From: Magallana gigas
Taxonomy: Eukaryota
Reading direction: 5' to 3'
DNA: 64,000 nucleotides
Assembly: GCF_963853765.1 (NCBI RefSeq)
Contig: NC_088856.1
Location: 14,322,001-14,386,000 of the forward strand
In this document: positions 172-56,413 of the stretch, in pieces
Layout of the letters: the number at the start of each line of letters is the position of its first letter
Position numbering within the stretch: the stretch's first letter is position 1
Position numbers and translations under genes: made by a program
Notes under the pieces: model-generated
Databases searched by the model: none
Told to the model about the DNA's origin: nothing
What the model saw: only the letters and a program-made list of their open reading frames with translations

Positions 172-1794
172 AGAAGTAAGAAAGTCTGCAAATAAAACAA
201 CCGCCTATCAAGAAGAAAGCAGCAACTATTTCAAAACTACAATTGGATTTGCCATATGTCTTTCTTTCCTCTTTCTCGCTCTAATCATCTTTGTGATTCT
301 AAAAATAATAAAGTTCTTGAAGCAAAAATCAATTTGGTTTCAAAAAGGTACAGTTATATTATATCTTACTTACTAAAGTAATATTTGGACAATATGTGAT
401 CTTTATATGGTGTTTATACATATACTGATTTTAAAAGCTTCAATCATTTTTCTAAAATAGGTTTTTTTTTTAATTTTTAAGGACATAAATCAAAGGAAAA
501 CGCTTTAAACAAAGACGAGGAGTCTGAACTTACAGGCAAAGAAGAAGGAAAATCCAATATACGAAGATTACACGACTTGATTGTCCAGGGTACAAAACAA
601 GGGTTTACTCGTTTGATATGTGATTTCAATAAAGATGATCTGGAACAATTAAACGTACGGGGATTAAACTGCTTACATCTTGCTGCAAAAGGTGGTAATA
701 TTCAATTATTTAAAAGAATTCATAAATGCGGTGTAAGCATTGACACAAAAGCAACTGACGGAAGGAATGTTTTGCACATTGCTGCCCACCACGGGAACTA
801 TGCAATATGCGAGTACCTTTTGCAAAAACATAAGAACCTATACACGGACACTGACAGATATGCAATGAATCCTGCTCACTGGGCTGCACTTGCTGGAGAG
901 AAATCTATATTGGAGCTCTTCATGAAATATGGATGTGATCTAACTGAACTTACTCATCCATATAGAGAAAATATAGTTTTATTTGCCTGTATGGGAAAAA
1001 GTTTAGCTGTTTGCAAGTTTGTGGGATCAAACAAAAACATTTCACACCTTTTGCACGAAAAGAATAGAGAAGGATGGAGCTCTATACAATATGCAGCTAA
1101 AAGTGGAAATCTTGAGGTTTTTAAATATCTTGTTGATGAAGGTGTAGATATTGAAAACAAATCACAGAAAACTGGAAAGAATTGTCTACATACCGCATGT
1201 GAAAAGGGTCATTTGAAAATATGCGAGTATATATTGAAAACGAAACCCGGGCTTTTAACAGAACTAGACAAAAATATGCAACACGTAGGACATTTTGCTG
1301 CAAAAAGCGGGGACGTTGAAATACTGCAGCATTTGTTAGATCATTCCCTCGTCGATAACGCGTTCTTACAGAAACCAGCCACTGATAATATTCATCTACT
1401 GCATATCGCATGCAGGCATGCAAGATTTGATATGTGTCTTAAAATAGTGAAAGAGTTTCCTTTTATGATTCACGAAATCACAGAAAAAGGATGGAATGCT
1501 GCCCTATTTATCACTGAAAGAGCTGGTGCCGAAAACGAACGAATACAAATTTTGAAAACTTTAACTGATATATCATCAGAATCCCCTTTAAATGCGTATC
1601 ATGTTTCACGATCCGGAAAAACTATTTTGTTCAATGCATGCGTAAACCGGTCACCTAAACTGGTTCAATTTTTGTTAGAAAACTTTCCAGACTTACCAGA
1701 AATTGAAAAATCAATGGATCCAATAGAGTCAGCAAACTCAGAGGAGATAAAAGAAATTTTTAAAACACACTATCAAAAAAGTTACAAATGTTAA
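172..1794 (+). CDS. Receptor paralog A (5'-partial): stalk + TM exon and terminal ankyrin-repeat exon of a single-pass TM ankyrin protein
   Basis: Exon 172-347 (tgtacag|...AAAG|gtac, phase 2-1) encodes EVRKSANKTT...IGFAICLSFLFLALIIFVILKIIK. After intron 348-481, exon 482-1794 is in frame with ORF 577-1794 and holds about 10 ANK repeats (GLNCLHLAAKGGN, GRNVLHIAAHHGN, GKNCLHTACEKGH). Same exon phases as paralogs C and D. Ectodomain exons lie upstream of the window. Confidence 0.85.
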
Positions 1795-14400: not shown

Positions 14401-17118
14401 AGGAAATCTACACAACATAGTTATCCATCTTTACGAACAAGCATTTGAAATATTACGTTCGCAGTATGGTAAAGATAAATATGAATCAAAGAACTGAAAG
14501 AACTGAAAAGCGTTAAGCCTGGATAAAACTGTTAAAAATATCCCAAATGTTCTAAAAATATTTGTGAAGAATCATATTTGAATCTTGATTTGTTCGTTAT
14601 TGTAAAAATGCACTCACTCAGAAATCGGATATCACTTAGTACATAGTTAAAGAATACATAAATCTTTGAAATAATTAATGCATGCTGACGTGTTACAATG
14701 AAAACTAAATATAATGCTGATGACTTAAAAAAAATCAGCATCACGGCATTTCATAAAAAATCTATGTGAATCTTTATTTTTGAAGCATAAAATATTTTAT
14801 CTATTTGACTGTAAAGTCAAAATTTCCTTTTTACAATATAAACATGTTTTAAAATATCACGATTGTTTTGAAATTTTAGCAATTTATGGAAATGGAGAAG
14901 TAATAATCTTATAAGAGCATTGCTAGACTAACTGAGTTATTTTATTTTAAACAGATTTTGCTGGTGCACAGATAAACAGTATATGCTTCTTGCAACGAAA
15001 ATAAAGTAAAATAACAAAGCTCAGATGATAATTTAAATTTATTTATGGGGTTTCAGTTTGCTAATTTTCATTTCTTTGTTATTACATCTGATAAATCGTA
15101 AGCAATAAGTGAAGAAAACTTTTTTTTTAAAACTGGCAAATTACGGTAACAAAATAAAAAGCCAAATGTTTTGACAAAGTACGACAATAATAAGATCGTA
15201 TTACAGATATGCCTAGCAGGAAATGCCACTTAGATCTATTCTTCTAAATTTTAGCTTTGGTATTCGAACATCAGGTTCGCCCCTCTGCTCCAAATCTCAT
15301 GAAAAGATGGGCATAAACACCTCCAATATATAAACATTACTGGATGTTGGAATATTATTCGAAACGAAGACGCTTCTCATCAGTTTAAGTATTGGCTAGG
15401 CAGTCTCTTCTGTGGTATATTTTAGGGAATATCGTTGAATTTAATGACGTCTAGCTCATATCTCAACAGACGTGAAGTGTCGTGTTTATAGTAAGTTTTG
15501 TCAAAGGGTGGGGGGGGGGTGTCATTGACGTCTATGTAGGTGTCACAACAGCATTTCACCGTCAAAACATGGCTGAAGCAAAATAATTTCAAATTCTCCT
15601 TTGAATTTGGTGTAATTCCTGCCACGACTGTGACCGTTTTCTTTTATGAGATGAAAAAAATTATAAGATGTCTGACTATTCAAGTTTTGTAATCAAGCGA
15701 GGTCATTTTAATTTTTTTATGCGTAATGTTTTTAAGGGGTGAGAAGGTTTGGGCTTTATTTTCAAGCACATGTATCTTCGACGTAAACAAGTTCTCATGC
15801 CTTGCAAGATGCACCTATGTTTTTGCTGCTAAATTGTAAATGAAATGTTGTTTAAAAATATGTCAAGTAGATTTTTTCCTAGAAATTCGTTTTGAATGTA
15901 TAACTTGTATCTAAAGTAAGCATCATTGCTAAGAATATATAGTAAAATTTAATATTGTTTACATAGTGACACCTGCAATACATACGATCTCTGTCGGAAA
16001 GGCTCAAGATGTTGCGATTGGATGGAAGTACTGTTTTGGCAAGCGTATCAGAATACGTAACCTGAAAAATGACCTGTAGCCTTGTAATAGGGTACGGGTT
16101 CTTTTAGAGAACTCAAACCATTAAAATGGCAAGAAGTTTTATTTTATAAATATCAATATATCGGGTATAGATGCATTGATATTTTTTATTTGTAAATTTG
16201 ATAATTTCATCACATACTACAAAATTTCATTTAAAGATTTGAGATCTTACACTTTGCTTTGAATTATTTACTGTTATTAGATGTTTTATGTATGTATAAT
16301 TTGCCAAACTGAACATATATTAAATCATCAATTATGTTATGTTTGCCCAAGATGAATCGTCCTCTAAGCAATTTTATATGAAGTATCACTTTACAGCTTT
16401 TGTTACATATATCTGCTGTCGTATTTCAAGTAACTTGACAGTTATAAGTTTTGTTAATTATATTCAAATCATTTGTGCTGTTGGATCATAATCAAATTAT
16501 AGAACTCCAAAATATGAAGGAAACATAGTTTTGTTTGCATGTATCGGTGAAAGTATTGAAATTTGTAGGATGTAACAAACATATTGCTTCCCTATTTTAT
16601 GCAACAAATAGTGAAGGATGCAATTCCATTCAATATGCAGCCAAAAGTGGTAACCCCAAAGTATTCAAATATCTTTGTTACAAGGTGTGACTATTCATAA
16701 TATACCAAGGAGTTAAAATCCCACCACTGACGATATTAACATCCTTCACATTGTCTGTAGACACGCAAAGCTGATATATGTGTCAAAATAGCCGACATAT
16801 TTCCTGACCTGATAAACGAAATAACAGAGAGAGAGGATGGAATGCAGCTCTCTTTATCACTGATAAAGCAGGAGCAGAAAGAGAAAGAATTAATATCTTA
16901 CATTTCTTAGAAAAGCGTAAATTGAATGTTTACCATGTAACTAGATCAAGAAAAACTATATTGTAAAATGCATGTGTAAATCGGTCGAGAAAACTTGTGA
17001 AATATTCAGTAAGCCGTTATCCCGATTTATTGAATATATAAAAAAAACAATGGATCCTAGAACAGCAGGCAAATCTCGCGAGATTGAAGAGCTTTTTAAA
17101 CAACATATCGAGACATAA
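11424..17118 (+). pseudogene. Receptor paralog B, pseudogenised (ectodomain and TM exons plus decayed ankyrin exon)
   Basis: Exons 11424-11607, 12956-13066 (111 nt, as in C and D), 13192-13266 (75 nt versus 70 nt in C and D; a 5-bp CTCAA duplication gives a frameshift and TGA) and 13436-13653 (TM: AVVVALAILLGISVSALLITCVFICC). The ANK remnant is at 16490-17118. The signal-peptide exon was not located. Confidence 0.8.
16490..17118 (+). pseudogene. Decayed ankyrin terminal exon of paralog B
   Basis: Fragments TPKYEGNIVLFACIG, NSEGCNSIQYAAKSGNPKVFKYL, DDINILHIVCRHAK, GWNAALFITDKAGAERERINIL and RSRKTIL*NACVNRS align to A, C and D. It has several frameshifts and stops and lacks ANK repeats 1-3 and 6-7. 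Confidence 0.88.
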
Positions 17119-26771: not shown

Positions 26772-29700
26772 ATAATAATAATAGAGGAAAAGAAACAAAG
26801 CAAAAACAATAAGGTTTTCCGTTTCCAACGGAAGACCTTAATAATACAACGTCGATATATTTATACATGTATGAACTTTACAATGTCTGGTATTTACACA
26901 AAAATCATTGTAGTAGATGTACTTTAAACCAAAGAGTCAAAATAGATATAGAGTTGTAAATAAATAAAATCGTTTCAATAATTTCGTATAACAGTATCAA
27001 TTTTAATCCCTCTAAAGATTTGTTGAAAGTGAATTTCTATTGACGCAATCAAACACCTTTACATTCATCTACTTTATTGTGTACTAGTATGTTCTTGAAA
27101 GAAACTTAATTCTTTGATTTATTTGAACGAGTTGAATGTATTTTATAATTGTATTACTATAGTTATGTTCGGTGCAATATTTTCACTGTATATTACTTTT
27201 AAATCAAAAAATCAACAACTGAGTTTTAAGTCCACCCAAAATTCGTGAAGCCGTGATTCATATTATACATTGTATGGTTTTTATTTAATTTATTGGATAT
27301 GAATACAAATTTTATTTTTGTAGCATTATTGTAGCATTATATAAGGATGATTTGCCAATCCTTTAAATTTTGGACAAATATTTTCTGATACAGTGTTTCA
27401 ACTTATTTTTTTACCACAACAGCATGTTTAAACATTGCACAGTTATTCTTTGAAAGAGAGTAGATGCGCAGGGGAATAATAATCTTTGTTAAGGATGTTA
27501 TTTATTCAGAGTTTGAATTATTAAATTTGGATTGTTTAAAAGTAAAGTTTCTGTCTGTTAGTCAATGATTTTTTGGCATAATATATGTAAACTTAGAGTA
27601 TAGTTTGAGTTATTCATTATCTATCAATATAAGTTGTATCAATTTGTCATGTTTAGCAAATTAAAAGAAGAAATTTGGATTGCAATATTTAAGAAGAACT
27701 TAATTTCTTTTTCAACTACATTTACCCTTCAATCTGTTATATTTTTACAATTACTAAAAACTATATCATATGTCCTATTTTATGGTACATGTATTTTTTA
27801 TTAATTTTATAAAATATTCCATGGCCACTTACTAATAAAGTATGCCATTAACCTAGTACTTGAAAGTGAAAATAACAATACAATTAAAGCTCTATAACTT
27901 ACAAAATATAGGTCTACATTATGATCAGTCGATGTTTTATTTCTTTTCATCGGAGAAAACAACATCCTTTCATACTTAACATTACTTTCTATTTTTTCTT
28001 AACCGATTTGTTTTCTTCCATGCGTTTGTGGCATCGCATGCACGAATGACAATGCCCAGTGGGCCATCAGGCGTGTTGAAGCGTGGACAACGCTTTAGTG
28101 CTGGATAATCGTATTTTAATGCATAGCATACCATTTTTTCTGTCCCGTATCCACTGCAGAAGAAAAATCATCATAATAATGATTACAGATAGAGCCAATG
28201 TCACAGTTACAGATACCACTATATCCACAGTGCACCCAACAACACAGGCGTTATCTTTTTGGTTGTCTGTATCGATGCTGTTGTTGGAATTGTTGGAATA
28301 GTTATATTCATTTTTGTTGTTTTTGTCAGTTATATAGTTGGAATAGTTGTGTGTCTTTGTCATGTTCTCCATAAATCTTAAAATAAAAATATGATAATGA
28401 TTAGTAACAGTATTATAATGCATGTCACGTAGATAAAAATGCATACATATTTACAATGCTTTAAAGGCTTTGGATGTGTTATGGAATATCTTCAGTACTG
28501 ATGATTCCTTTCTAACACAGTTTATTTCTTATATCTTTATACCATGATCAATATCTTTTAAGTTACATGTAATTTCCTTATTTTCAGGACTTTTCAGGAT
28601 ATTAGGATATAATCTCCTTTACAATAAAATATCAGTTGGCTTATTACTAATTTTGGTATTTCCTTTAGTCTTTATTTATTTATTTTGAAATCTACAGAAA
28701 ACTTAGCATTCAAATTGTATAGCTAACCTTGACACAATACATTCCATGTCCGCACTAAAGCATCCAAATTGTGGGTTTATATTTGTGCACAGTGGATCTG
28801 TATAATAAGAAGTAGATTAAATGTGAATGAATTTCTGAGAAATTTCGAAAACTATTCTGACAAAGTATTTTTTGCGTATCCGAAATTTTTAACGAATATT
28901 ATAAATAAATCAGGTCTCCTTGTGTACATTACGACGTCCGTTACAATTTGTTAGGAGACAACAACCCCTATTCATCATCTTTTTTAATTTTTTTTTACAC
29001 TTTTCACACTTTTTAACATCCATGTTACATGTTTAAAAATGTAAACTTGTTTTCTGCTTCGTGAACGGATGTATAACACTACAAATGGAAGTCCATATAA
29101 TGTGACCTTTTATCAAACGCAATTAACCTGCTGTGATTTGTTGTTGTTGTTTCAAAAAGTAGACAAGAGATATGATAACAAGACATGAAAAAGGAATAAA
29201 ATCAAAATTCAGTCACGTGTGCACCTTGCTGGATAACAAGTTCAGCCGAATTGCGTTATATCTCACCGACGTTTCTGTTCGACGTCCGTTATCATTATCC
29301 AGAAAGGTATGTCAGGAACATTTAACCTTATCATTTCATTAACCATAGAAAACAAATTAATAACAATTATTGATTTCCTCGATAGATTTATTAGGTGTAT
29401 TTTATAAGAGATAAAAATCGTTTTCGATAGGATGCAACCTCTACCTCAGACTATAGTCTGTCCCAAGTAATTGTTTCTATCATTTTTTGGGGATGATTTT
29501 TAATAAAGAATACACACACCTGTGAAAGAAATACAGTTGATATCGATAAAAGGGAAAATATACAAGATATCTTCATTGACACATTTTCATTTTTCACTCA
29601 TAAAAGTTCAAAGAAACGAAAAAGATTTCTTACGAAGATTTATAATAGGAATGTTTACAATTTTTTTCCATTCGTAACTACTCGGAATACCTCGCACAAT

Positions 29701-32056
29701 TTCTCGACGTTATCATTCAGGCCAGACTTTTTTTTTTTTGGGGGGGGGGGGGGGGGTATAGTGTATTAAAACCTGAAGGATAGAGGAGGCGTTTCAAAAC
29801 AGATAATCTGGATAAAGTGTTGGAAGCAAAAACTCAGGACAGAGTATTATAATTTTAACTCTAACCACTGTAAAATCAAAACCACCTTGTTGAAATAGTT
29901 TCATGAAAATTACAATTTTTAGTCGGGAGTCTTTTTGAAGATTTTCAAACTTGTAAATGAAGAGTTTAAATGCTTTTAAACATATTTCTTTCCTTGATAC
30001 ATGTACCTGTACTAACATTTGTAGAGTTCGTTGCTGAAGTAGAATTCATCAGGACAACCACAAAGGAAGGTCTTGTCGCATTTTACATGATTTAGAATAC
30101 CAACGTCTGCTAGTTCTAAACAGTTACCTGTAAAGTATGCGTGTTGGTAGAAAGTATTGAAAATAAGCTTTGCAGCAAAAAGACATCGCCTTTCCCTTAA
30201 ATCTTATTAATCATTGCATCAACATAGTATATAACATATTTTAGCATCAACATTAATTATCTTGAAAGACTACATTTTTCAAAGTTAAAAACATACTGTC
30301 AATTATTTATTATTTCCAAAGAGTTGCAGTTTGCCTTTTACACACTTTATCAAGAGACAGTACAGATATAATTATAGTACCCTTGTGAAATGGAATCTTT
30401 TCTCCCCTTGGATAACAAAATTCAATGAGAGATGTAAAGTTTTTGTTAGGTACACAGTGATATCCATGTGTTGTGTTGCAGTTTAACCGAAGTGATGCGT
30501 TGGTACTTTCTTCCGTGTTTCGAGGACAGACTTCAACAGGGAAAACTTCAAATTCATAATCGGAAAACTGCAATTATATTGATAAATTAGATAATAAAAT
30601 ACTTTAAAGGGCATGGTCACGATTTTGGTCAATAAATCATTATTTACAATGCTTTGGGAATGCATTTCTAATAATCAAATGAAATTTGAGAGTCGGTCGT
30701 TAAGTTATAAGCAATTCTTTGCAATGTAAACAAGTTCCGTGCCCTGTTTGTGTTTACATAGGTTCAAGATACCGGTAAAAAAAAATCAAGCAGATTTTTT
30801 TTATCTTCTCATTCATTTTAGGGCATTCATTAACAGTTCTAACGTTTAACACATTCATTTTAGGTCTAAAATTGGAATTTCACTTCAACATTCAAAACGT
30901 AAACGAAAGCTTTGATTACATAGCAAATAATTGTAAGCTCTGTAACTCGCTTATAACTCAACGACTGACACTCAAATTTTGGTTGCCTATTAAATATGCC
31001 ATAAAATCGGAAAAATAATTTTTGACCAAAATCGTCACTATGCCCCCTTAAAAAAGATTTACATTTATCGTATTTCTCGTACGTGTATCTGTGGATAATT
31101 ATATCCTTTTTAAATTCAACACAATTCAATGGTACATTTTGCTTTATTCAAGATAGGGATGTTACTAAGAAAAACAATACTGACTGCAAAACGTTTATCA
31201 GTTAAAGTCTGATATTTGTTATTCAGAAATCTCAGTTCTAACTTATTTAATATCATTGGATAATTTGCTTATTTAACAGAAAAAATAAACCAAGACTTTG
31301 TTTTAAGTGGTATGTAATTCTCTTCAATTTTGAAAGATTCATTTTATAACGTGTTCAAATGCTATGCCATGTTAAAACATTTTTCTTTGGCTTTTTGATG
31401 CAAAATACGTCATTTTAAAAGTAATTAGTAAATAATCGACACGATAATCGACATTATAACATGTTAAAGATATTCCATGGAAGATATTCATCGCATGATA
31501 AGTTAAACATCTGGTATAACAAAAGAAATCATACTTTAAAAATCCCTGCAAGAATATTGTTGAGAATTAAATTCAGTTTTAAAAACTATAATTTCCCGTC
31601 TTTCCTACAACAGGGAATTAGACGTTCGCCTAAGCAGTAAGTAATTTACCAAAGTATGTTTTTTGTCAGGTTCTATATAGATGTTAGAAGGTTCTTAAGA
31701 GCAATGTAAAATAAAAACCACTAAGACAGACAACAGATGATCGGAAAATCGTACGAAACTGATAATAAAATTGTATCCAACTGTACTTATATAACAAATG
31801 TACATGTTTTTGGTGGGTTTCATAAATACCATCGGTATTATTTGCAGAAATTGTATTATAAAACTTTTACAAAGAAAATATATTAGAATATGAGTTGGAT
31901 TCATGCATTATTTTAAAAGATTGAGCAAAAACTGATTGAAGTTTCGCATTCCTTTGATCAATTAATGTACTTATTAGCTAGGGATAGGTGTTTCATTTTA
32001 CTTACCGATATAACTAATATTGATAGTATCAGAATCAGAACTGCAGACCAAAACAT
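21736..32056 (-). CDS. Receptor paralog C, complete: signal peptide - Cys-rich ectodomain - stalk - TM - linker - about 10 ankyrin repeats (about 675 aa)
   Basis: Seven exons, all GT-AG with compatible phases: 32056-32006 (MFWSAVLILILSILVIS), 30567-30381, 30127-30017, 28797-28728, 28376-28132 (TM VVSVTVTLALSVIIIMMIFLL), 24166-24047 and 22979-21736. Total 2028 nt, open. Further micro-exons cannot be excluded. Confidence 0.88.
24380..24637. repeat. Tandem duplication of a 130-bp unit (intron of C)
   Basis: AGAAAATTAGACAAAAAGGAGAG...GCGAAATAATTCCC occurs twice, at 24386 and 24516. Confidence 0.9.
25657..25831. mobile_element. Tc1/pogo-type MITE
   Basis: ta|CAGCAAAACTCGGTTATAACGAA ... AAACGAGTTTTACTA|ta, with internal TTCGTTATA repeats. 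Confidence 0.7.
26186..26258 (-). mobile_element. tRNA-derived (SINE-like) sequence, not a functional tRNA
   Basis: Minus strand GGGTCCGCGTAGCTCAGTCGTTAGAGTGGTGGACTTGTGCCCAGGCGACCCGGGTTCAGTCCCCGAG has A-box and degenerate B-box, but poor anticodon and acceptor stems. Confidence 0.6.
26400..26845. mobile_element. Helentron/HINE-like element with duplicated terminal hairpin
   Basis: The end unit (AAT)n-AGAGGAAAAGAAACAAAGCAAAAACAATAAGGTCTTCCGTTTCCAACGGAAGACCTT is present twice in tandem. A related hairpin lies at about 24258-24290. Confidence 0.6.
30608..31047. mobile_element. Intact TTAA-flanked MITE (Kolobok-like), intron 1 of C
   Basis: ttaa|AGGGCATGGTCACGATTTTGGTCAA ... TTGACCAAAATCGTCACTATGCCCCC|ttaa. 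Confidence 0.8.
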
Positions 32057-46432: not shown

Positions 46433-49400
46433 ATGGATTGTAGTCAATATTACATCACTATTTGCCTGGTAATTTTATCCACACTGACTTCGTCGGTAAG
46501 CAATAAATGATACACGGAGATGGTTAGAGAAAACTAAAAAAAAAACCGTGTACTTTAAAATTATGTATCTGTATATATTTGATCAAAGGACTATCAATTG
46601 ATGATGAATATGCAGATTGTGTGTTTATTAAATTTTGCAAAACCTATCAAGAATTTAAACTAACCTGCAGAAAGTCCACATCTAGAGCATATTAACTTGA
46701 AAGACTTCTCTGTTACGTTCTGCGTCAGAAACCTTATTCCAAAATCGACTCCCTTTCCAGTTTCCAGTTAACTGAACGTGCTTTCATTTGTATCTCTTTA
46801 TTTTGTCTATAAAGGAATAAATAAATAGATAAGTCTGCTTTGGTTACTTTACTGCCAGTGTGTAAAACTTTATTGTAGATCAATTTGCGTATTTGTTAAG
46901 TAAAAATCCCATTTCTTGCTTTGCTTTTTGTATGTTCATTATTCATAATTAACTATAAAGCAGAAAGGCATTCTCCAACTAAATCAATTATGGTGCGTAT
47001 AAACATGAAGCGTAATTTTAGAGTATAACATTTTTGTATGAATGATTTAAAACAGATATGTGTATAATTTAGAGATTAGTGAAAATATTTCTGAAACACG
47101 TTATGTATCTGTAAATACTTATCATACAATGCATTAATCCTGATTTTTTCTCAGAAAATATCATTCTTTGTAGATGTCCGAGTACGCATTCCAAATATTT
47201 TCAGTTAAACATTGTCCTAGTAGTGAAGAAGGTTGGGGAATGGCATCCTCTCGATTAGGATGTAACAGTACACATGGATATCAGTGTGTTCCTAATAAAC
47301 ATCTGACTTCTCTCATTGAGTTTTGTTACCCAAGGGGTGTCAATATCCTGTTTGAAAAAGGTTTGAAACATTCATTTTAATATGACCTTTAAATTTGTTG
47401 AATGGGATTGGTTAAATTAAAAAAAAATTATAAGCTAGTAGGACAGCATTTTAAGCCCATTCTATCAATTTCGATCCGTTTAATTTCAAATGGTTTTTTG
47501 AACTCAGGTTTTCTATATCGTTGAGGTTAATTTGAAAACATAACCATAATATGTTTTTGACATAATCAATTTCAGCTACAAAAAAGTGCATACCAAATTG
47601 CAATGTTCAGTAATATACTGCTAACATTAGATTATGTCACAAAAACGTTAACGAAATACTATCATATATATAGTATACTTGATAATATTGTTAGGATGTC
47701 GAAAGCACGTGGAACTAAATATTGTTCTGAATAAAATATAGATTGTTTTATATTTATTTTAAATTTGTATCATAGTGACGTAAAATCAAAAATCAAGCAA
47801 TTGATCCAGTCAAATTAACAATGACATTCACTAGTTCACCAAATCTTACATAATCTGCAAAATCGTTCTCTAACTGAAAAAGGTATCACTGACCAAAGGT
47901 AATAGAAAGGCCGTGTGAGAGAATTGTCTGGTAAATAGATAAGAAACCGAGATATATATATATAATGTATATACATTTACTTCAGATAAATAAAAAAAAA
48001 ATCTTATCAAAAAATTCGAAATACCTAGTTTGAAAGAACTATATATGATAAGACTTAAAGTTTGCCCCCATAATTCGCCATTTTTTTAAGTGTTTCGGGT
48101 ACAATAAAATGTTAACTAATTTTTTAGAAGAGTTGATATAAAATATATTTTTCATCTATTTATTTGATTTATTTGCACTCGCTGGCAGTATATGACGTCA
48201 GAAGTGACGCCATTTCTATAATTCAATCAATATTAGCCCAAAATTGACATTTTTCTTATCTATTTACGAATGGGAAATATAGAGCGCATGCTTAAACAAG
48301 GAAATTTTTTGGTCACTAATAGTCTTGGCTAGATACATCTCTGATTAAAATATTTTATTTGTTCAAGAATGCGCTCTATGTTTTCGGAAAGGAAAAACTG
48401 CTCGAAAACAAGCTGTTTACGCTAAAAATGCAAAAATGGCGGGAAAAGGTTGTCTTTACAATGGCATATTTACAAATTGTGGGCACTTGAATCAAAGTGA
48501 ATATTATGTAAACACATCACATACATATCTGTACTAAGAAAACAAAGAATGATAGTAAAATGATGTATTCATCTTAGGGGGCCATTTTAGGCCCTTATCA
48601 TATATAGTCCTTTAAAGTGAACATTTTGGGTTATAGATGACAGTGTAAAAAAAACATGTCTCCCAGAAACGGCATCATTTTATGAATTTGAACACCACCC
48701 TTTTTATTCGACATCAGTAATAGGGTTGTGTTGTATGCCTGTTCACCGTTATTATATTATTTGTCTTTATGAAGGGAATTGCCTAGAATTGGCTGATGAT
48801 GGAATTCTAAATCATGTTCCTTGCAACAAAATGTTTGAGTTCGGGTGTCCAGACAAATTTTATTTAAGCAACGAAATATATAAATGTAAGCAATTTTGTT
48901 TTGGTATAACTTTTCAAAGTTAATCTCACGATTTTTGCCATGTTTTTTGTTACTTTTTTGGCACTATTGGACGTGATGTGTTTCATAACATATTTAACAA
49001 TCCTTCAAAGTATGCCAGTTTATTTTTAATGGAAGTTAAAACGGCAGAAAAATAAAAAATAAATTATTTGTAAATATTTGATGCAGACTAGATAATAATC
49101 TAATTATCATATTTTTATATCAAATCTATTTCCTTCGTTTCTAGATCCAAGTTGCCTTGCAATTAATACAACGCTGAAATGTTTTTATGCCGACTTCAAT
49201 TGCATTTACTCCAAGTTAGTGTATTTCTCATTACTCGGCAAATTGTGTTTCTACGATTATATAGGAGCTCTCATGATTTGCGATGGTATATGATTTTTAA
49301 CACACAACCAGTTGGATAAAAATCATATACCATCGCAAATCATGAGAGATTCTTTTAATCGCATGCTTAACCACAAGTTAAACCTCAATCTTTTGTTAAA

Positions 49401-52400
49401 CCTCAATTTTTCTGTAAACATAATTGTGAGCATGGAAAAAAGTTCCTTGAAGATTAGCAAACAAACATTTCATTTTGTGGTATATTTTTATCAATTTATA
49501 AAAAAAAAACACCTGAACCAGCTCTAAATGCTGCACATTTATAACTCTACGCTTTTCAATTGAATTATTTTGTTACTTTTTCAATCTACGTCAATAGTCT
49601 GCATAAAGCTACTTAATGTTAAATTATGACGTCATGTGGCGTTAGAACACATAGTGGAATATCAAAAATTTATCCCATGAGTAATATCCACCGTATATTG
49701 AGATAAACATGTGATAATGGACAATATCTTGCAAAAAGTAAACATTTATCCGATGATAAAAAACATGACCAATTTAATGTCTGATAACATTATTAACGTG
49801 AATACAAAATTGATTCTTAGAGTGAATGCATGCAGCAATTCTAATTTCTGGAGAGTCAGACGGAGAGTTAATATGTTTTCATTTTAAAATAGAATATTTT
49901 GAGCAAATATGTTTCATTAAAAATAATATTAAAAACTCTATTTTTTATAAATCATATTTTTTTGGTTCTTCTTGACCAGATCTATGATAAACCAAACCAG
50001 ATATATATTAAACCAAACTAGAGTTATGATAAACGAAACATGCGAAGAAAGCCTTATTTGTGGAATGAAAAATAGCCTCCTCAACTCGTGCAATGTTACG
50101 GCTATTGTGATGGCTGTGATATTTGGTATAATTTCTTTGATACTGGCCGTTTTGCTAGTGGTATTCATCAAGAGAAGAAACGTTACAATCAAAAGAAAAA
50201 AAGGTAAAGACGTGTATTTACATTTTGTGTTTGCTTTAACTAAATTCAATAGTGTCATATTATCATCGTTTCTGTAGTTTATCTTTATGAAAAGCAATAG
50301 GGCAATGTACGAATCGCCTTCTGTCATAGTAGTATTATATATAACATATACCATATTCATATTATCTTTTATTAATGTTTAGGCTTACAAGATTTGGAAA
50401 ACGGTATGTACGTAATTCATTTCGTTCAACATCATTATGCTATAATTACATTTAGTGTATAATTCCCCTTCTGTTTACAGGGAAATCTGTGACGTTCATT
50501 TTTAATAGCTCACCAGCCCTGATCAGGGAGTATGAGTATAAGTAAACATTATCAGGCTTTTGAATACATTTATTATTGTACTGAGATCATATGAACCGTT
50601 CAAAGTTATGCAACCAATTTGATATGAACTTATAAAAATGGTAGATGAATCATATCTATTCGTTAATAAAACAAAAATATACTTCTCGACAAAGTCTATG
50701 GTATTTTTTTTAGCAGCGGAAACAAACTAAATAACATGTAAATACACGTATGCCTGTTCCATCTTTTATTCATATCCCTGCAAAAAAGAGTATATAATGG
50801 CTTTAAAGCGATACAAAAATATGTCATGCAATTAAAAACATCAATATAAAAATGAATATTAATCTTTCGAAAGTATTTTTTTAAAATTCCTTCATTCTAA
50901 TTTAAGTCTTGATAGTCACTGTCAAGAACTAAAGTGTTTTTAAGGTGGTACGGGGCATCTCTTTATATTCATGTTTGAATTTGAATTAAAGTACATTATA
51001 ATCAAAATACTCTCAGCAGTTTAAATTTAAAATTTTACAATATTTAACCAAAAATGAGTTTTAAATGTTTAATGTTTTGGAAAAGTAAAACTTTAAAAAT
51101 CCCCAGCAAGAACTCATGACTTACAGATTCGAAGTGAACCCTCTAACCCACTGGTTTTCGCTGTTAGGTGACAATTTATGGAAAGAAACTATAAAATGAC
51201 ATTTAATTTGCAATTGATTGTTTGTTTTGATAATTAGAACGTCACAACTTAGAGGTGGCCCATACTAACTTAACACCATCGTTTCAAGTAATCATTATGC
51301 ATGTTTTGGTTTTTTAATCACAGATGAGTAAAAGTAATTGCATGTTTTGTTAGAAGCATTAATCCTCCACAACACGATGCATTTTAGTGAAAATTTATGT
51401 TTCTTCATATTCGCGTAAAGTATTAAGGATTAAGAAAAACAAGAGATGTTTTTAAAACACGTATGCCCCCTTATGAAAATGCTATGGAAACATCTGCGAA
51501 GAACATGAACGGAAACTGCAAATAATGGAAACTTTCGAATTCCATGGGGCATAACTGTGTCAAAAAATGCTTTATTGTTCCCCAAAAAGCTGGATTGTAT
51601 TTAAAATTAAACTTGACCTAGATATCATTATGATAAAACTGTATACAAAATTCCATTCCAATATGTGCATCCTCTGAAAAGAAAATGAACGGAAACTGCA
51701 AATTATCTGAATTTTTCTACGTCCAAGGGGCTTAACTCTGTCGAAAATTGCTCAATCGTACCCATTACTGCCTGACGGGTCAAATACAGTACAGAGGTTA
51801 AGCAAACCGATGTGTACACGTGAGAACACTAAGTCATCAGTTTTTGTAACGGCGAATTTCGAGTAGCGTTGACAAAAAGGACTGTATTACGTAAATGAAA
51901 TAACCTTCAATGTTTACTGGAGTTGGTATAGTTTGTTCGTATACCCAGTCTGTTCTCAATGACTAGCACATCTTTATTACACAGTTAGTGTGCAGTAAAT
52001 GCCAATATGACTGTATTAAGAAACTATCCTCACAAGCAATGTGTTTATTTTTATGTCTATTTTTGTAGGAGAAAGCCATCCTCTTCAAGAAGTGAGATTT
52101 GAACAATCGGAGATAACTATTGAACCAAACGAAGAAAGAAATGGTAACAGAGCAGTTAAAAAAAGAAGCTATTCTTCATTTTCAATAATTACAATATAAA
52201 TATTACCAAAAGATTTGATGCTAAAACCACATGCATATATATTCTCATTGCTGTGGACTCATTAAAAATCGTAGGGGCGAATTTTCATGGTTTGTATAAA
52301 ATTCACAGGTTCGAGGTTCGATAATTTCGTGTATCCTCTTATACGTACAAAAGGAAATATGACTTTAAATCCTGATTTATTAATTTGCGGTGGATGTATA

Positions 52401-54595
52401 TTCAAGGATGAGGGATACCAACGAATTCCACGAAAATTGAGCCACCACAAAATCTATTGATTTTACAGTATACCTCTGTATTTTTCTATGTAAAATTATA
52501 ACGAATGTACCTACATTTCATTCATCAATGTACTATTTCATCTAGATAGCCTTTACCGTTAAAGTGTTCGTTCTATTTGCCCAGGGTTAATAGTCATCGT
52601 AACTATTTACCAGCAACATTCGATTTCCCTTGCTTTTATGTCGGAACCCCAATCAAGATATCACAGTCGCTACCTCTAAACTCTTACTTGTTCACCATAA
52701 AAAAAACTCAGCATCACCGATAAATAATTTTTTTGTTAAAAACGAATACTTATACATGTATACTTGCATTGAAGACATAAGCCAATAAATTCTCCTGCTC
52801 GATAGCAACTACTTCCCTAGCCTCGGCTTTGCCTTTGGAAACAGCGACAATACATAAATTTTATATGTCAAACAAACATCAATATGAATATAAATATTAG
52901 GTAATAGTTGCTGTTAAGGGGGTAAACTTCCTATTGCTAGTAAATGGGGAGATAATATAAATTTTATCTCTTGCAGACAATGTACATGCGTTGCCTCCGC
53001 AACATATTAGTCAACCTCAAAACGCTGCGGATCAATTACCAATATCTTTAGTTGCAGGTGATTTTTGAACATTTCAATATATGATACATAAATTTAAAGG
53101 GCCCCTCTGAATTAATGGATAAAAGTTTACAAAGCATTTCAGAGAATTTTGCTTTGACTTTGACCTGTAACTTAGAAATTTTTCTAACTGGCATAAAACT
53201 TTAAGTCCAATCTCATTACCCGTTACATTATATAACGCATGTTTTGTTCCTCTGAGCAAGATTAAGCAAATGGGATTGACTTGGTTCAAAGTCACTGCAC
53301 ACACTTTACAGAAAAGCTCTACTTATGTGAAGTATGAGCCAAGTTAGGCTATGTGAAGTATACATAACATATTCAATATCATTGCCTACCCTTTGGCCAA
53401 ATTAAGGCACCCTGTGGTTGAAGTATGAACCAAATTCGACCAAGGAGAAAGAAGATACGCTACGGATAAGGATTTTTCTTACCATTCTGATATGACTTCA
53501 CATTTTACCTTGAAACTTGATTTAAGGTCACTGCACACCCTTTACCCAAAGGCACTCTGTGGGTGAAGTATGCGCCAATATGGGTCAAAGGGAGAGCAGA
53601 TATGCTCCGGACAAGAGATCTCAGTCGGACAGACAGACGGACGGACGGTTGGACGGACCGATAAACATCACTTTAGGTCGCCAGCAGGGTGGGGCTTTAA
53701 TAATTCGACCTAAAAGGACACTAGTATATCAAAATACGCCGGTAAAGTTAGACAGCTGGTCAATGATAAATACCATGAAAAATTTGAAGAGAGAATAATT
53801 CAATGTCGAGATGTTTTGTATATACCATAGTTTTTACATTTTGTTTTAAAATTGCAAAATGTTGACAATGTTTTGTTATTACATTAACATCCGAACAATG
53901 ATTTGTAAAGGATGGGATGTTTGGGTTTTTTTTAGACGAAATGCGTCTTATCCAAGTAGCGAATTTTAAGTTATGCTGAAACAGCGTTGTAAATTAATAT
54001 CAGTAATGCAGTAAAATAACCTCTAATGTTTACATGATTTGGTATTCTTTGTTCGTATACCCAGGTCTGTTTTCAATGACTTGCACTATAAGCGTGCAGA
54101 TACGACTGTGTGACTGTATTAAGAAAAATTAACATCACAAAAAAATGTGTTAAATATGTTTATTTAAGCAGGAGAAAGCCATCCTCTTCAAGAAATGAAT
54201 TCTGAACACATGGAAATATCTACTGTGTCAAACAAAGAAAGAGATGGTAAAAGAGCAGTTTAAATAAGTAGCTATTTTTCAATTTCGTAAATTCCAATGT
54301 TAANNNNNNNNNNNNNNNNNNNNNNNNNNNNNNNNNNNNNNNNNNNNNNNNNNNNNNNNNNNNNNNNNNNNNNNNNNNNNNNNNNNNNNNNNNNNNNNNN
54401 NNNNNNNNNNNNNNNNNNNNNNNNNNNNNNNNNNNTAAGCGCTTTCATTTTCATCTTCAGATGTTTTCAACTAACCTAGTTGTAAAACATCTGAAGATGA
54501 AAATGAAAGCGCTTATGTTTTACTCGGACTTTGTGTTTTTATTCATTTAAGTTTTCTATATTTTATCCGATCACTGTAACTTTTTCCTGGATTTA

Positions 54596-55069: not shown

Positions 55070-56413
55070 AAAACAAAATACTTATTTACTTGCATTGAGG
55101 ACATTAGAAAATGTATTGTCCCCCTCGATAGCAACTTTTTCCCTTTGGAAACAGTTGCTGTAGATGGGGTAAACTTTTTATTGCTAGTGAATGGGTGGAT
55201 AATATATATTTTATTTCTTGCAGACATTGTATTGCCTCCGCAGCATATCAGCCAACCTCAAAACTCGCATCAATTACGAACATCTATAGTTACTGGTGAT
55301 TTTCCAACGTTTCAATATTTGATACATAAATTCGATAAGCATTCACTTGAAGAAGTTGATTCCAATGGGTTCAATTGTTTACATTCCGCTGCAAAAGGCG
55401 GTAATTTGAGCATTTTCAAAAGGATATGCAATATGGGAGTTTCCGTTGAGAAAAAAACAAACGATGGATCAAATATCTTGCACATTGCGGCACAACACGG
55501 ATGTTACCCAATTTGTGAATATATTTTAGAAAACTATGCAGCTTTGTTTTCTCTAAAAGACAACCTTGGTATGAATCCTGCACACTATGCAGCAAATGCT
55601 GGTCAATATCATATTCTTGATCTCATGTTGAAACAAGGTTGTGATTTATTTGCCGAAGATGAGAAAAATAACGAAAATATAGTTCATTTGGCGTGTATGG
55701 TAGGAAGCTTGGAAGTGTGCCAATTTGTAAAGGCTAACAAAAATCTGGAGAAACTACTGCATGCTAAAAACGGCGGAGGTTGGAATTCTATTCAGTATGC
55801 GACAAAAAATGGACATCTTGATATAGTGAAATTTCTTCTCGAGAATGGCGTTGATGTTAAAAACAAATCCAAAAAAATCGGCAAAAATTGTCTTCACACA
55901 GCATGTGAGTTTGGCAAACATGAAATATGCGAGTATATCATAAGTAAAGCACCAAACCTTATAACCGATACCGACTCTAGCGGACAACATGCGGGACATT
56001 ACGCAGCAAAGAATGGACATACTGATATACTACAGCTGTTGATAAACGTCGATAAATATGCCATGCAAAGACCATCTCATGACAAAATAAATATCCTCCA
56101 TGTCGCGTGCGAAAATGCACATTATGATATGGTTGTGAAAATTGCCAAGGTTTTTCCGTTTATGGTAAAGGAAATTACAGAGAAAGGTTGGAATGCAGCA
56201 CTTTTCATCACCGATAAAGCTGATGCAGAAGAAGAAAGAATCAAGATATTGAAACATCTCCTTGATCACGGCCTTGATGTATATCGTGTATCAAAGTCAG
56301 GAAAAACTATTCTCGTGAATGCACGCAAAAACAACTTAAAAGATATTGAACAGTACTTGTCACAACAGTTTCCGAACTTAATAGGTTTAAGGAGACAAAT
56401 TTCATTTCAATAA
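46433..56413 (+). CDS. Receptor paralog D, complete: signal peptide - Cys-rich ectodomain - stalk - TM - micro-exon linker - about 10 ankyrin repeats (about 671-698 aa)
   Basis: Exons 46433-46495 (MDCSQYYITICLVILSTLTSS), 47174-47360, 48775-48885, 49145-49214, 49980-50203 (TM AIVMAVIFGIISLILAVLLVVFI), 50383-50403, 52069-52143, optional 52977-53057, 54172-54246 and 55224-56413. All GT-AG with compatible phases; exons 2-4 have the same lengths as in C (187/111/70). Confidence 0.85.
48034..48611. mobile_element. TTAA-type MITE in intron 2 of D
   Basis: Left AAGAACTATATATGATAAGAC..AAAGTTTGCCCC; right GGGGCCATTTTAGGCCCTTATCATATATAGTCCT|ttaa. Confidence 0.65.
50944..51269. mobile_element. TTAA-flanked MITE with internal tRNA-like segment
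   Basis: ttaa|GGTGGTACGGGGCATCTC ... GAGGTGGCCCATACTAAC|ttaa. The core at about 51105-51160 (GAACTCATGACTTACAGATTCGAAGTGAACCCTCTAACCCACTG) resembles a reverse-strand tRNA. Confidence 0.6.
52251..52470. mobile_element. Tc1/mariner-type MITE
   Basis: CTGTGGACTCATTAAAAATCGT...TTTTCATGG ... CCACGAAAATTGAGCC...TTTTACAG|ta. Similar to the 19565 element and absent from the duplicated downstream intron copy. Confidence 0.55.
53095..53705 (+). mobile_element. Helentron/HINE-like element truncating the duplicated ankyrin-exon copy
   Basis: TTTAAGGTCACTGCACACCC...GTGAAGTATGAGCCA repeats, GACA/GACG microsatellite and a terminal GGTCGCC.GCAG.G.GGGGC..TAATAA motif. A related element lies at about 51440-51770. 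Confidence 0.6.
54304..54435. other. Assembly gap (132 N)
   Basis: Run of N. Confidence 1.
54436..54515. repeat. Near-perfect 80-bp palindrome (fold-back element) abutting the gap
   Basis: TAAGCGCTTTCATTTTCATCTTCAGATGTTTT-CAACTA acc TAGTTG-TAAAACATCTGAAGATGAAAATGAAAGCGCTTA. Confidence 0.9.
54598..54677. repeat. (TA)n microsatellite
   Basis: Direct reading. Others: (GA)n about 25531-25564, (TTG)n about 55036-55068, (GA)n about 57751-57796. Confidence 0.95.

What the first reader, a model, noticed from the sequence alone, without database searches (positions are those of the whole stretch)
47174..49214. Unnamed 10-cysteine ectodomain with an invariant core and variable flanks
Seen: B, C and D align gap-poor over about 120 aa as CP-x14-RLxC-NxT-HGYxCVPNKxxTSLIEFCYPxG-x8-GNCLxLxxxGxLNxVxC-x7-CP-x3-YxSxxxxxYPxC-x2-IN-x4-CFxADxxC. 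The core CNxTHGYxCVPNKxxTSLIEFCYP, with a conserved N-glycan sequon, is nearly identical, while residues between cysteines vary. C has an extra 11th Cys (FLCGCP). Inference: a disulfide-stabilised ligand-binding fold, possibly distantly TNFR-CRD-like, with diversified specificity loops.
Basis: partly seen in the sequence, partly recalled or inferred. Interest (0 to 1): 0.72.

Follow-up and report, generated by a model that had tools for sequence, protein, structure and literature searches.

The report
Oyster-only ten-cysteine receptor head domain
The stretch encodes the outer, disulfide-rich domain of a real, expressed Pacific-oyster membrane protein; this domain has no named family or known fold, is found only in oysters, and heads well over a hundred receptor-like genes wired to ankyrin, STAND-NTPase or ROCO modules inside the cell.

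Summary
Window 47174-49214 carries three AG/GT-bounded exons (187, 111 and 70 nt) encoding a ~122-aa domain with 10 invariant cysteines. It is the ectodomain of paralogue D, Crassostrea/Magallana gigas LOC117682385 (= P0174, 665 aa): signal peptide, ectodomain, glycosylated stalk, TM helix, linker, ankyrin repeats. Transcript-type contigs confirm every splice junction. Copies C and A are intact.

The exon-1 core recurs at 138 or more places in this genome. All named members come from oysters. The same head is joined to ankyrin-only, nSTAND3-ankyrin, Roc-COR-ankyrin or scramblase tails.

The "invariant core, variable flanks" pattern is real, but the domain is under purifying selection (dN/dS 0.08-0.37). 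No diversifying selection was detected; stalk, TM and linker evolve faster.

The scan noted this module before on other DNA of this genome (s1-403331, s1-394906, s1-403185). Ligand and function remain inferred.

The parts
46433..46495 (+). Paralogue D (LOC117682385): start codon and signal-peptide exon (MDCSQYYITICLVILSTLTSS)
   Evidence: tblastn of P0174; GT donor; spliced contigs join 46494/5 to 47173/4
47174..47360 (+). D ectodomain exon 1: N-flank, Cys1-Cys4, conserved core CNSTHGYQCVPNKHLTSLIEFCYP
   Evidence: AG/GT borders; 100% identical to P0174 residues 22-83; junctions seen in runs X1 and X2
48775..48885 (+). D ectodomain exon 2: Cys5-Cys7, the most variable part of the domain
   Evidence: AG/GT borders; 100% identical to P0174; junctions 47357>48772 and 48885>49145 in contigs; dN/dS 0.26-0.33 in paralogues
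49145..49214 (+). D ectodomain exon 3: Cys8-Cys10 (YPSCLAINTTLKCFYADFNC)
   Evidence: AG/GT borders; junctions 48885>49145 and 49214>49980 in X1, X2 and X3
49980..50203 (+). D stalk (four N-x-T sequons, three non-conserved Cys) plus TM helix and basic stop-transfer (KRRNVTIKRKK)
   Evidence: Translation; weak TM-type Pfam hits only; 100% identical to P0174 residues 145-218
52069..52143 (+). D cytoplasmic linker exon (GESHPLQEVRFEQ...)
   Evidence: tblastn of P0174; borders read
54169..54246 (+). D second linker exon, a duplicate of the first (GESHPLQEMNSEH...)
   Evidence: tblastn of P0174, 100%; borders read
55224..56413 (+). D ankyrin-repeat exon, to the stop codon
   Evidence: Pfam Ank_2 E 6e-45; 100% identical to P0174 residues 270-665
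28728..30567 (-). Paralogue C (LOC105333226) ectodomain, three exons (30567-30381, 30127-30017, 28797-28728), with the extra 11th Cys (FLCGCP)
   Evidence: 97-100% identical to P0183
21817..22878 (-). Paralogue C ankyrin-repeat exon
   Evidence: tblastn; Pfam Ank_2 E 2.6e-39; 99.7% identical to P0183
11424..13266 (+). Paralogue B ectodomain, three exons (11424-11607, 12956-13066, 13192-13266); exon 3 is broken by a 5-bp tandem duplication
   Evidence: alignment to the intact transcript L042 shows 5 extra bases, and the original frame runs into a stop
16532..17038 (+). Paralogue B ankyrin-exon remnants with in-frame stops
   Evidence: tblastn hits containing '*'
556..1794 (+). Paralogue A (LOC105333239-type) ankyrin exon; its ectodomain exons lie just upstream of the window (locus L031)
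   Evidence: 98% identical to P0167

Best explanation
Shown. Window 47174-49214 encodes, in three exons, the extracellular domain of an expressed type-I membrane protein of the Pacific oyster (LOC117682385). The protein reads: signal peptide, a ~122-aa domain with ten invariant cysteines, an N-glycosylated stalk, one TM helix, a fast-evolving linker, and about ten ankyrin repeats. The domain is predicted with high confidence to be one compact alpha/beta unit (six strands, three to four short helices) that resembles no solved structure and no Pfam family. It is the common 'head' of an oyster-restricted family with at least 138 exon-1 copies in this genome. Through one TM helix it is joined to ankyrin repeats alone (this tandem cluster A-D), to an nSTAND3 NTPase plus ankyrin repeats, to Roc-COR plus ankyrin repeats, or to a scramblase.

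Inferred. The head is a ligand-binding sensor. The invariant Cys2-Cys4 hairpin and the hydrophobic residues are fold-determining. The loops that vary between paralogues (before Cys1, after Cys4, Cys5-Cys6, Cys6-Cys7, after Cys7) form the candidate binding surface. Ligand-driven clustering would then bring the cytoplasmic ankyrin scaffolds together, or in sister clades trigger the STAND or ROCO nucleotide switches, to start an innate-immune or cell-death-type signal. Specificity differences would come from old divergence between many paralogues, not from ongoing positive selection.
For: Gene model and expression. Exon borders and phases are consistent. All exons are 100% identical to P0174. Spliced GT..AG junctions are seen in three runs, including one 805-nt contig running from the signal-peptide exon to the TM exon.

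Domain definition. Ten Cys, one Gly and one Pro are invariant in 47 sequences.

No known family. Pfam finds nothing on the exon peptides, on full-length proteins or on the 47 ectodomains at E<=1. The PDB sequence profile finds nothing.

One unit. The C-terminal half alone folds poorly (pLDDT 74, pTM 0.38) and matches nothing.

Family size and range. 138 genome matches and 486 database proteins. All named members are Ostreidae.

Architectures. Pfam on full-length proteins shows Ank, nSTAND3, Roc-COR and scramblase tails. In a census of retrieved proteins, 221 carry the domain, it starts at a median residue of 28, and 191 of 204 have a TM-like segment within 140 aa after it.

Constraint. dN/dS is 0.08-0.37 for the ectodomain, against 0.13-0.23 for the ankyrin domain and 0.2-1.0 for stalk, TM and linker. 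For exons 1/2/3 in nSTAND3-type paralogues it is 0.15/0.33/0.20. The entropy minimum lies in the Cys2-Cys4 segment.
Against: No ligand, binding assay or expression pattern is known, so the immune or cell-death role rests only on the company the domain keeps (STAND, ROCO, ankyrin). The domain is among the most conserved parts of these proteins and shows no excess of non-synonymous change. That fits a conserved ligand or a structural role at least as well as a diversified sensor. Disulfide pairing could not be read because model coordinates are not exposed. The AF2 alignment consists of oyster paralogues only. Sixty-two of 204 family members in the sample have tails with nothing recognisable.
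Confidence: 0.6

Rival explanations
1. The head is a constant module rather than a diversified sensor. It would bind one conserved endogenous partner (a secreted oyster adaptor, a matrix component or a co-receptor), or mediate self-association of the receptors. Functional diversity would then lie in the interchangeable cytoplasmic modules.
For: Purifying selection acts on the whole domain, even among young tandem duplicates: dN/dS is 0.07/0.26/0.11 for exons 1/2/3 in the C10 cluster and 0.08-0.37 in ANK-type pairs. The same head is reused with four different tails. An unpaired 11th Cys recurs two residues before Cys7 in several members and could form an intermolecular disulfide. The eLife 2021 paper describes a 'constant' cysteine-rich extracellular region with variable C-termini in a Crassostrea expansion.
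Against: Ectodomains of different subfamilies are only 35-40% identical, with the differences concentrated in loops. That much divergence is more than a single shared partner would need. Pattern-recognition receptors also commonly show dN/dS below 1, so the selection data do not discriminate between the two readings. The homodimer prediction gave no verdict.
Confidence: 0.28
2. The domain is a very divergent member of a known cysteine-rich receptor domain: a TNFR-type CRD, or a Frizzled-type CRD, as one UniProt automatic name (P0370) and one ESM Atlas cluster name suggest.
For: It has ten cysteines in about 120 residues, the same count as a Frizzled CRD. UniProt and the Atlas label some members 'FZ domain-containing protein'. 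GITR chains appear in the Foldseek list.
Confidence: 0.03
3. The stretch is a decaying or non-functional gene copy, or an annotation artefact.
For: The neighbouring copy B is a pseudogene. D carries internal duplications and a stop-containing copy of its ankyrin-exon start (note s1-403251).
Against: D's exons are open, spliced exactly as modelled in transcript-type contigs, and identical to NCBI models with at least 10 isoforms. Relatives evolve under purifying selection.
Confidence: 0.02

Closest known systems
Oyster 'cysteine-rich-region + TM + DED + TRADD-N(NCOA6) + variable C-terminus' expansion described in silico by Kaur, Burroughs, Iyer and Aravind, eLife 2021 (PMC8195603)
   Same: Same genus. 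Same logic of a constant cysteine-rich extracellular region, one TM helix and interchangeable apoptosis/immunity-type cytoplasmic modules (STAND NTPases and ankyrins are listed among them). The same paper defined nSTAND3, the NTPase found behind this head.
   Different: The window genes and all relatives examined lack DED and TRADD-N. None of 12 regions upstream of DED hits in this genome holds the head. None of 12 LOC or accession numbers of my hits occurs in that paper's tables. Whether their unnamed 'cysteine-rich region' is this same domain could not be tested. The paper gives it no name, alignment or structure.
Frizzled cysteine-rich domain (Pfam PF01392)
   Same: An extracellular domain of about 120 aa with ten conserved cysteines. 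Some members carry the automatic name 'FZ domain-containing protein'.
   Different: There is no profile match and no structural match. The predicted secondary structure is six strands plus short helices, whereas a Fz CRD is mainly helical by established knowledge. The cysteine spacing also differs.
TNF-receptor cysteine-rich domains (Pfam PF00020)
   Same: A disulfide-rich ectodomain on a single-pass type-I receptor.
   Different: TNFR ectodomains are ladders of ~40-aa six-Cys pseudo-repeats. This is one non-repetitive 122-aa unit. There is no profile hit, and Foldseek hits to GITR are at noise level.
NLR/STAND innate-immune receptors and ROCO proteins (for example Apaf-1, NLRs and LRRK2-type Roc-COR)
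   Same: Sister clades of this family carry a STAND (nSTAND3) or Roc-COR switch followed by repeats, the classical sensor-switch layout. Cytosolic HEPN-nSTAND3-ANK relatives exist in the same oysters.
   Different: Classical STAND and ROCO proteins are cytosolic. Here the switch, or in the window genes only the ankyrin scaffold, hangs behind a TM helix and an extracellular head. The window genes themselves have no NTPase.

Membership tests
TNFR cysteine-rich domain (PF00020) | Significant match to the TNFR_c6 profile | tested here: not met
   No hit at E<=1 on exon peptides or on 47 ectodomains
TNFR cysteine-rich domain (PF00020) | Tandem ~40-aa modules with six Cys each | tested here: not met
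   The alignment shows one non-periodic 10-Cys unit; gaps between successive Cys in the reference P0011 are 15, 7, 12, 13, 13, 7, 15, 8 and 6 residues
TNFR cysteine-rich domain (PF00020) | Structural similarity to solved TNFR ectodomains | tested here: not met
   GITR chains only at Foldseek E 2.2-4.7 and TM 0.19-0.22; none in the VIA list
Frizzled CRD (PF01392) | Ten conserved Cys in about 120 aa | tested here: met
   The count and length agree, but the spacing differs from my recollection of Fz CRDs, which is a lead and not a test
Frizzled CRD (PF01392) | Significant match to the Fz profile | tested here: not met
   No Fz hit in 47 members at E<=1, nor in the UniProt 'FZ domain-containing' member P0370 at E<=10
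Frizzled CRD (PF01392) | Mainly alpha-helical CRD fold and a structural match to solved Fz, ROR or sFRP CRDs | tested here: not met
Crassostrea Cys-rich-region-TM-DED-TRADD-N expansion (eLife 2021) | Cysteine-rich extracellular region followed by one TM helix | tested here: met
Crassostrea Cys-rich-region-TM-DED-TRADD-N expansion (eLife 2021) | Intracellular DED plus NCOA6-clade TRADD-N | tested here: not met
   No DED or TRADD-N in P0174, P0183 or any scanned relative. No ectodomain lies within 10 kb upstream of any PF01335 hit, and the single PF13820 hit is not near one
Crassostrea Cys-rich-region-TM-DED-TRADD-N expansion (eLife 2021) | Their cysteine-rich region is homologous to this domain | not testable with these tools
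   The listed proteins (XP_022304237.1, XP_022305084.1, XP_022303703.1) could not be fetched by accession, and LOC cross-matches were negative
Oyster 10-Cys head receptor-like family (defined here by alignment A2) | Ten invariant Cys with the family spacing plus the LxEFCY core | tested here: met
   B, C and D match profiles A1/A2 at E 1e-22 to 1e-25
Oyster 10-Cys head receptor-like family (defined here by alignment A2) | Three-exon structure of the domain (187/111/70 nt, end phases 1, 1, 2) | tested here: met
   Identical in B, C and D. The same three-exon split is seen in nSTAND3-type loci
Oyster 10-Cys head receptor-like family (defined here by alignment A2) | N-terminal signal peptide, and a TM helix within about 140 aa after the domain | tested here: met
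   P0174 sequence; 191 of 204 family members in the sample. Both rest on sequence inspection and a hydrophobicity rule, not on a dedicated predictor
Ankyrin-repeat proteins (PF12796) | Multiple ankyrin repeats over the curated cut-off in the cytoplasmic part | tested here: met
   Ank_2 at 152 bits against a cut-off of 27.3 for D; A and C likewise

The most novel reading that the evidence does not exclude
The 10-Cys head is a new protein fold that arose in oysters. It serves as the shared extracellular sensor of a large family of membrane-anchored STAND, ROCO and ankyrin receptors, in effect transmembrane counterparts of NLRs in which recognition outside the cell is wired directly to a nucleotide switch or scaffold inside. 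The tandem ankyrin-only genes of this window would be its simplest output form.
Probability: 0.35. Interest if true: 0.8.

Novelty: new variant of a known kind. Interest (0 to 1): 0.55.

Why it matters
Oysters lack adaptive immunity, suffer mass mortalities from OsHV-1 and vibrios, and are known for huge lineage-specific expansions of immune-type genes. Here one undescribed extracellular domain heads well over a hundred single-pass proteins whose cytoplasmic parts are classic signalling switches and scaffolds (STAND NTPase, Roc-COR, ankyrin).

Public annotation hides the family under misleading names such as 'alpha-latrotoxin-like', 'ankyrin-3-like' and 'protein phosphatase 6 regulatory subunit'. 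Defining the domain by alignment, exon structure and a confident model would let the family be annotated properly. It would also give structural biology a small, probably new, disulfide-rich fold to solve.

It further makes a concrete question testable: can a STAND or ROCO switch be driven directly by an extracellular ligand? For this particular window the result is more modest. The genes are the ankyrin-only branch, and the domain evolves conservatively.

Tried and rejected
- Homodimer prediction of the ectodomain: 'no answer' (score 0.00). This is not evidence either way.
- Viral structure library, to test for a shared domain with oyster viruses: nothing (best E 0.8).
- Folding the C-terminal half alone, to test for an independent small Cys module: lower confidence and no match. 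I read the domain as one unit.
- Link to the eLife 'cysteine-rich-region+TM+DED+TRADD-N' proteins. DED and NCOA6-TRADD-N searches of the genome, a scan of 12 regions upstream of DED hits with the domain profile, and a look-up of 12 LOC/accession ids in the supplement were all negative or uninformative. The question stays open.
- Genome-wide pairing of ectodomain exons with nSTAND3 exons: only 21 of 234 candidates were scored, so no census was possible.
- The look-up of encoding contigs for the C. angulata relative of D (P0173): not on record, so there is no dN/dS for D's own closest relative.
- ESM Atlas feature search: only unnamed mollusc clusters.
- Literature searches for the family, its LOC numbers and nSTAND3: only the eLife paper is relevant.
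- dN/dS among A, C and D themselves: rejected because they are only 50-60% identical (saturated).
Exons were searched by reference, and the stored database protein P0174, identical to D exon by exon, stood in for the whole protein. In some searches exons were concatenated inside a script only to check the reading frame.
- The N run at 54304-54435 was left untouched.
Full report
WHAT IS THERE

The window is AT-rich eukaryotic DNA (about 30% GC).

For D, reading the DNA and checking borders gives three ectodomain exons: 47174-47360, 48775-48885 and 49145-49214. All have AG/GT borders, and the frame runs on into a stalk-plus-TM exon at 49980-50203. C (minus strand) and B (plus strand) have the same three exons with the same lengths, 187/111/70 nt. 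B exon 1 is one codon shorter.

The sequon beside Cys2 and the extra Cys of C (FLCGCP) are both real.

One correction is needed. B's exon 3 has 5 extra bases, a tandem duplication, relative to an intact transcript of a close relative (L042). The original frame then runs into a stop. B's ankyrin exon also carries stops.

WHOSE GENE IT IS

A profile of the three exon-1 peptides (A1) was searched against 1.84 billion representative proteins. It gave 486 hits at E<=1e-3.

Word-index searches with stored full-length hits returned named proteins. D is 100% identical, exon by exon, to P0174, which is XP_034305641.1, 'alpha-latrocrustotoxin-Lt1a-like isoform X5 [Crassostrea gigas]', gene LOC117682385. 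C is P0183/LOC105333226. A matches P0167/LOC105333239. The genome is therefore the Pacific oyster.

Mapping P0174 back onto the window gives the whole gene:
- signal-peptide exon, 46433-46495
- three ectodomain exons
- stalk/TM exon
- two duplicated linker exons, 52069-52143 and 54169-54246
- ankyrin exon, 55224-56413 (Ank_2 E 6e-45)

P0174 served as the stored reference for the whole protein.

IS IT EXPRESSED AND SPLICED AS MODELLED?

Yes. Contigs of three public runs skip exactly the modelled introns with GT..AG ends: 46494>47173, 47357>48772, 48885>49145 and 49214>49980. One 805-nt contig of run X2 runs from the signal-peptide exon to the TM exon with at most one differing letter. The runs are only guessed to be RNA, but intron-less contigs are cDNA-like.

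Nine relatives were also recovered as single intron-less transcript contigs with complete reading frames.

WHAT THE DOMAIN IS

Forty-seven database proteins carry the complete domain. In their alignment (A2) all ten cysteines, one Gly and one Pro are invariant. W22, Y37, P41, L48, E50, F51, Y53 and others are at least 90% conserved.

No Pfam family matches:
- the exon peptides
- the full-length proteins outside their ankyrin, NTPase, Roc-COR or scramblase parts
- the 47 ectodomains at E<=1

A profile search of all PDB sequences finds nothing (best E 1.3).

AlphaFold2 on A2 gives a very confident single-domain model: pLDDT 94.5, pTM 0.86, strands at 9-12, 36-42, 48-53, 65-69 and 75-79, and helices at 19-28, 95-105 and 118-125.

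| Structure search with the whole model | Best result |
|---|---|
| Foldseek vs PDB | E 1.4, TM <=0.22 |
| Viral library (BFVD) | E 0.8 |
| ESM Atlas | Only Mollusca clusters at TM 0.85-0.94, one of them 99% nSTAND3 |

THE TWO NAMED RESEMBLANCES FAIL

TNFR CRD. There is no PF00020 hit and no 6-Cys repeat, and GITR appears only at noise level.

Frizzled CRD. UniProt auto-names one member (P0370) 'FZ domain-containing protein', and one ESM Atlas cluster carries the same automatic name. However, there is no Fz profile hit even at E<=10, no Fz-type chain in either structure list, and the predicted alpha/beta architecture differs from the mainly helical Fz CRD known from the literature.

THE FAMILY AROUND IT

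The exon-1 profile hits 138 places in the 564-Mb genome, clustered on five chromosomes. This is a lower bound, because only 150 of 222 candidates were scored.

All named members come from Ostreidae: C. gigas, C. angulata, C. virginica, Ostrea edulis and Saccostrea cucullata.

The head is followed by a TM helix and then by one of several tails:
- ankyrin repeats only (this window's clade)
- nSTAND3 NTPase with or without ankyrin repeats (for example P0132, 1347 aa)
- Roc-COR plus ankyrin repeats (P0108, Ostrea)
- a scramblase (P0147 cluster, seen in several transcript contigs)

It is a biased sample, and ANK, nSTAND3, Roc and scramblase were called there by local BLAST against reference segments rather than by Pfam. 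In it, 221 proteins carry the domain, starting at a median residue of 28. Of the 204 with enough sequence after the domain, 191 have a TM-like segment within 140 aa. Tails were ANK only in 81, nSTAND3 with or without ANK in 54, scramblase in 6, Roc plus ANK in 1, and unrecognised in 62.

Cytosolic HEPN-nSTAND3-ANK proteins without the head also exist in the same oysters. One C. virginica protein (P0029) carries two heads in tandem.

SELECTION

I computed Nei-Gojobori dN/dS on nine transcript CDSs.

| Region | dN/dS |
|---|---|
| Ectodomain | 0.08-0.37 |
| Ankyrin domain | 0.13-0.23 |
| Stalk | 0.2-1.0 |
| TM | 0.3-1.1 |
| Linker | 0.35-0.55 |

Exon-wise analysis of genomic nSTAND3-type paralogues gives 0.15, 0.33 and 0.20 for exons 1, 2 and 3. 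In a young cluster on C10 the values are 0.07, 0.26 and 0.11. Only one position reaches the global synonymous rate.

The most variable positions sit before Cys1, after Cys4, in the Cys5-Cys6 and Cys6-Cys7 loops, and after Cys7. Column entropy is lowest in the Cys2-Cys4 segment.

A divergent allele or copy of D in run X3 shows the same contrast. In ectodomain exons 2-3 it has 3 synonymous and 2 non-synonymous changes. In the stalk/TM exon it has 1 synonymous and 6 non-synonymous changes plus a one-codon deletion, including the loss of two stalk cysteines.

So 'invariant core, variable flanks' is a fair description. Selection is purifying throughout, yet variability is clearly localised. My methods are crude (pairwise counts, no site models, no surface mapping).

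HOW IT PROBABLY WORKS

Shown: a secreted-pathway, disulfide-rich, glycosylated head on a type-I membrane protein with a cytoplasmic ankyrin platform.

Inferred: the head binds something outside the cell, and clustering is passed to the ankyrin scaffold, or in sister clades to STAND or ROCO switches that work by induced oligomerisation. The company it keeps points to innate-immune or cell-death-type signalling. That is guilt by association.

The main rival is that the head is a constant module binding one endogenous partner, or self-associating. The selection data suit that reading equally well. The dimer prediction gave no verdict.

PRIOR KNOWLEDGE

The genes are annotated, but only through their ankyrin repeats, under misleading names. 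No paper in the library cites the loci.

Kaur et al. (eLife 2021, PMC8195603) defined nSTAND3 and described a Crassostrea expansion with a 'constant' cysteine-rich extracellular region, a TM helix, DED plus TRADD-N and variable C-termini. I could not show that their region is this domain:
- The relatives examined have no DED or TRADD-N.
- No head lies upstream of any DED hit in this genome.
- No identifiers overlap.

Earlier notes of this scan report the same module elsewhere on this genome (s1-403331) and its nSTAND3 and ROCO versions (s1-394906, s1-403185). I confirmed those architectures independently on database proteins.

VERDICT

This is a real, expressed gene segment. It encodes an undescribed, oyster-restricted 10-Cys ectodomain with a confidently predicted fold that matches nothing known, and it heads a very large receptor-like family. 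Function remains inferred.

Noticed in passing
window 13192-13266 and 16532-17038: Paralogue B is a pseudogene in this assembly. A 5-bp tandem duplication in ectodomain exon 3 shifts the frame into a stop, and the ankyrin-exon remnants contain stops. Close relatives (P0001, P0155) are intact.
   Followed up: yes
window 47972-48626 (intron between D ectodomain exons 1 and 2): An interspersed repeat with very high summed contig depth (up to about 9000) in transcript-type runs and many variant copies. It is probably an abundant transposable element and is not part of the gene.
   Followed up: no
window 37080-37541 (-), within the GC-richer block at about 36-40 kb: An ORF matching the Pao retrotransposon peptidase (PF05380, E 2.5e-29). 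This is a BEL/Pao-type retroelement fragment between paralogues C and D.
   Followed up: partly
window 52069-52143, 54169-54246 and 52753-53095: D's two cytoplasmic linker exons are duplicates of each other (GESHPLQE...). A stop-containing copy of the start of the ankyrin exon lies between them. This matches the sibling note s1-403251.
   Followed up: partly
P0029 (C. virginica LOC111102848); P0147 cluster (C. gigas LOC117685933 / scramblase 1-like): Unusual family members. One protein has two tandem 10-Cys heads and no ankyrin domain. Another architecture, head-TM-phospholipid scramblase, is seen in several independent transcript contigs but is split into two gene models in NCBI.
   Followed up: partly
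window 49980-50203, run X3: A divergent allele or copy of D has six amino-acid changes and a one-codon deletion in the stalk/TM exon, removing two of the three stalk cysteines. Its ectodomain exons 2-3 carry only two amino-acid changes.
   Followed up: partly
database proteins P0312, P0340, P0355, P0382 and others: Oysters also have many HEPN(PF18738)-nSTAND3-ankyrin proteins without the extracellular head. The same NTPase-ankyrin chassis therefore exists in a cytosolic and a membrane-anchored form.
   Followed up: no
window 54304-54435: A run of 132 N inside D's last intron.
   Followed up: no
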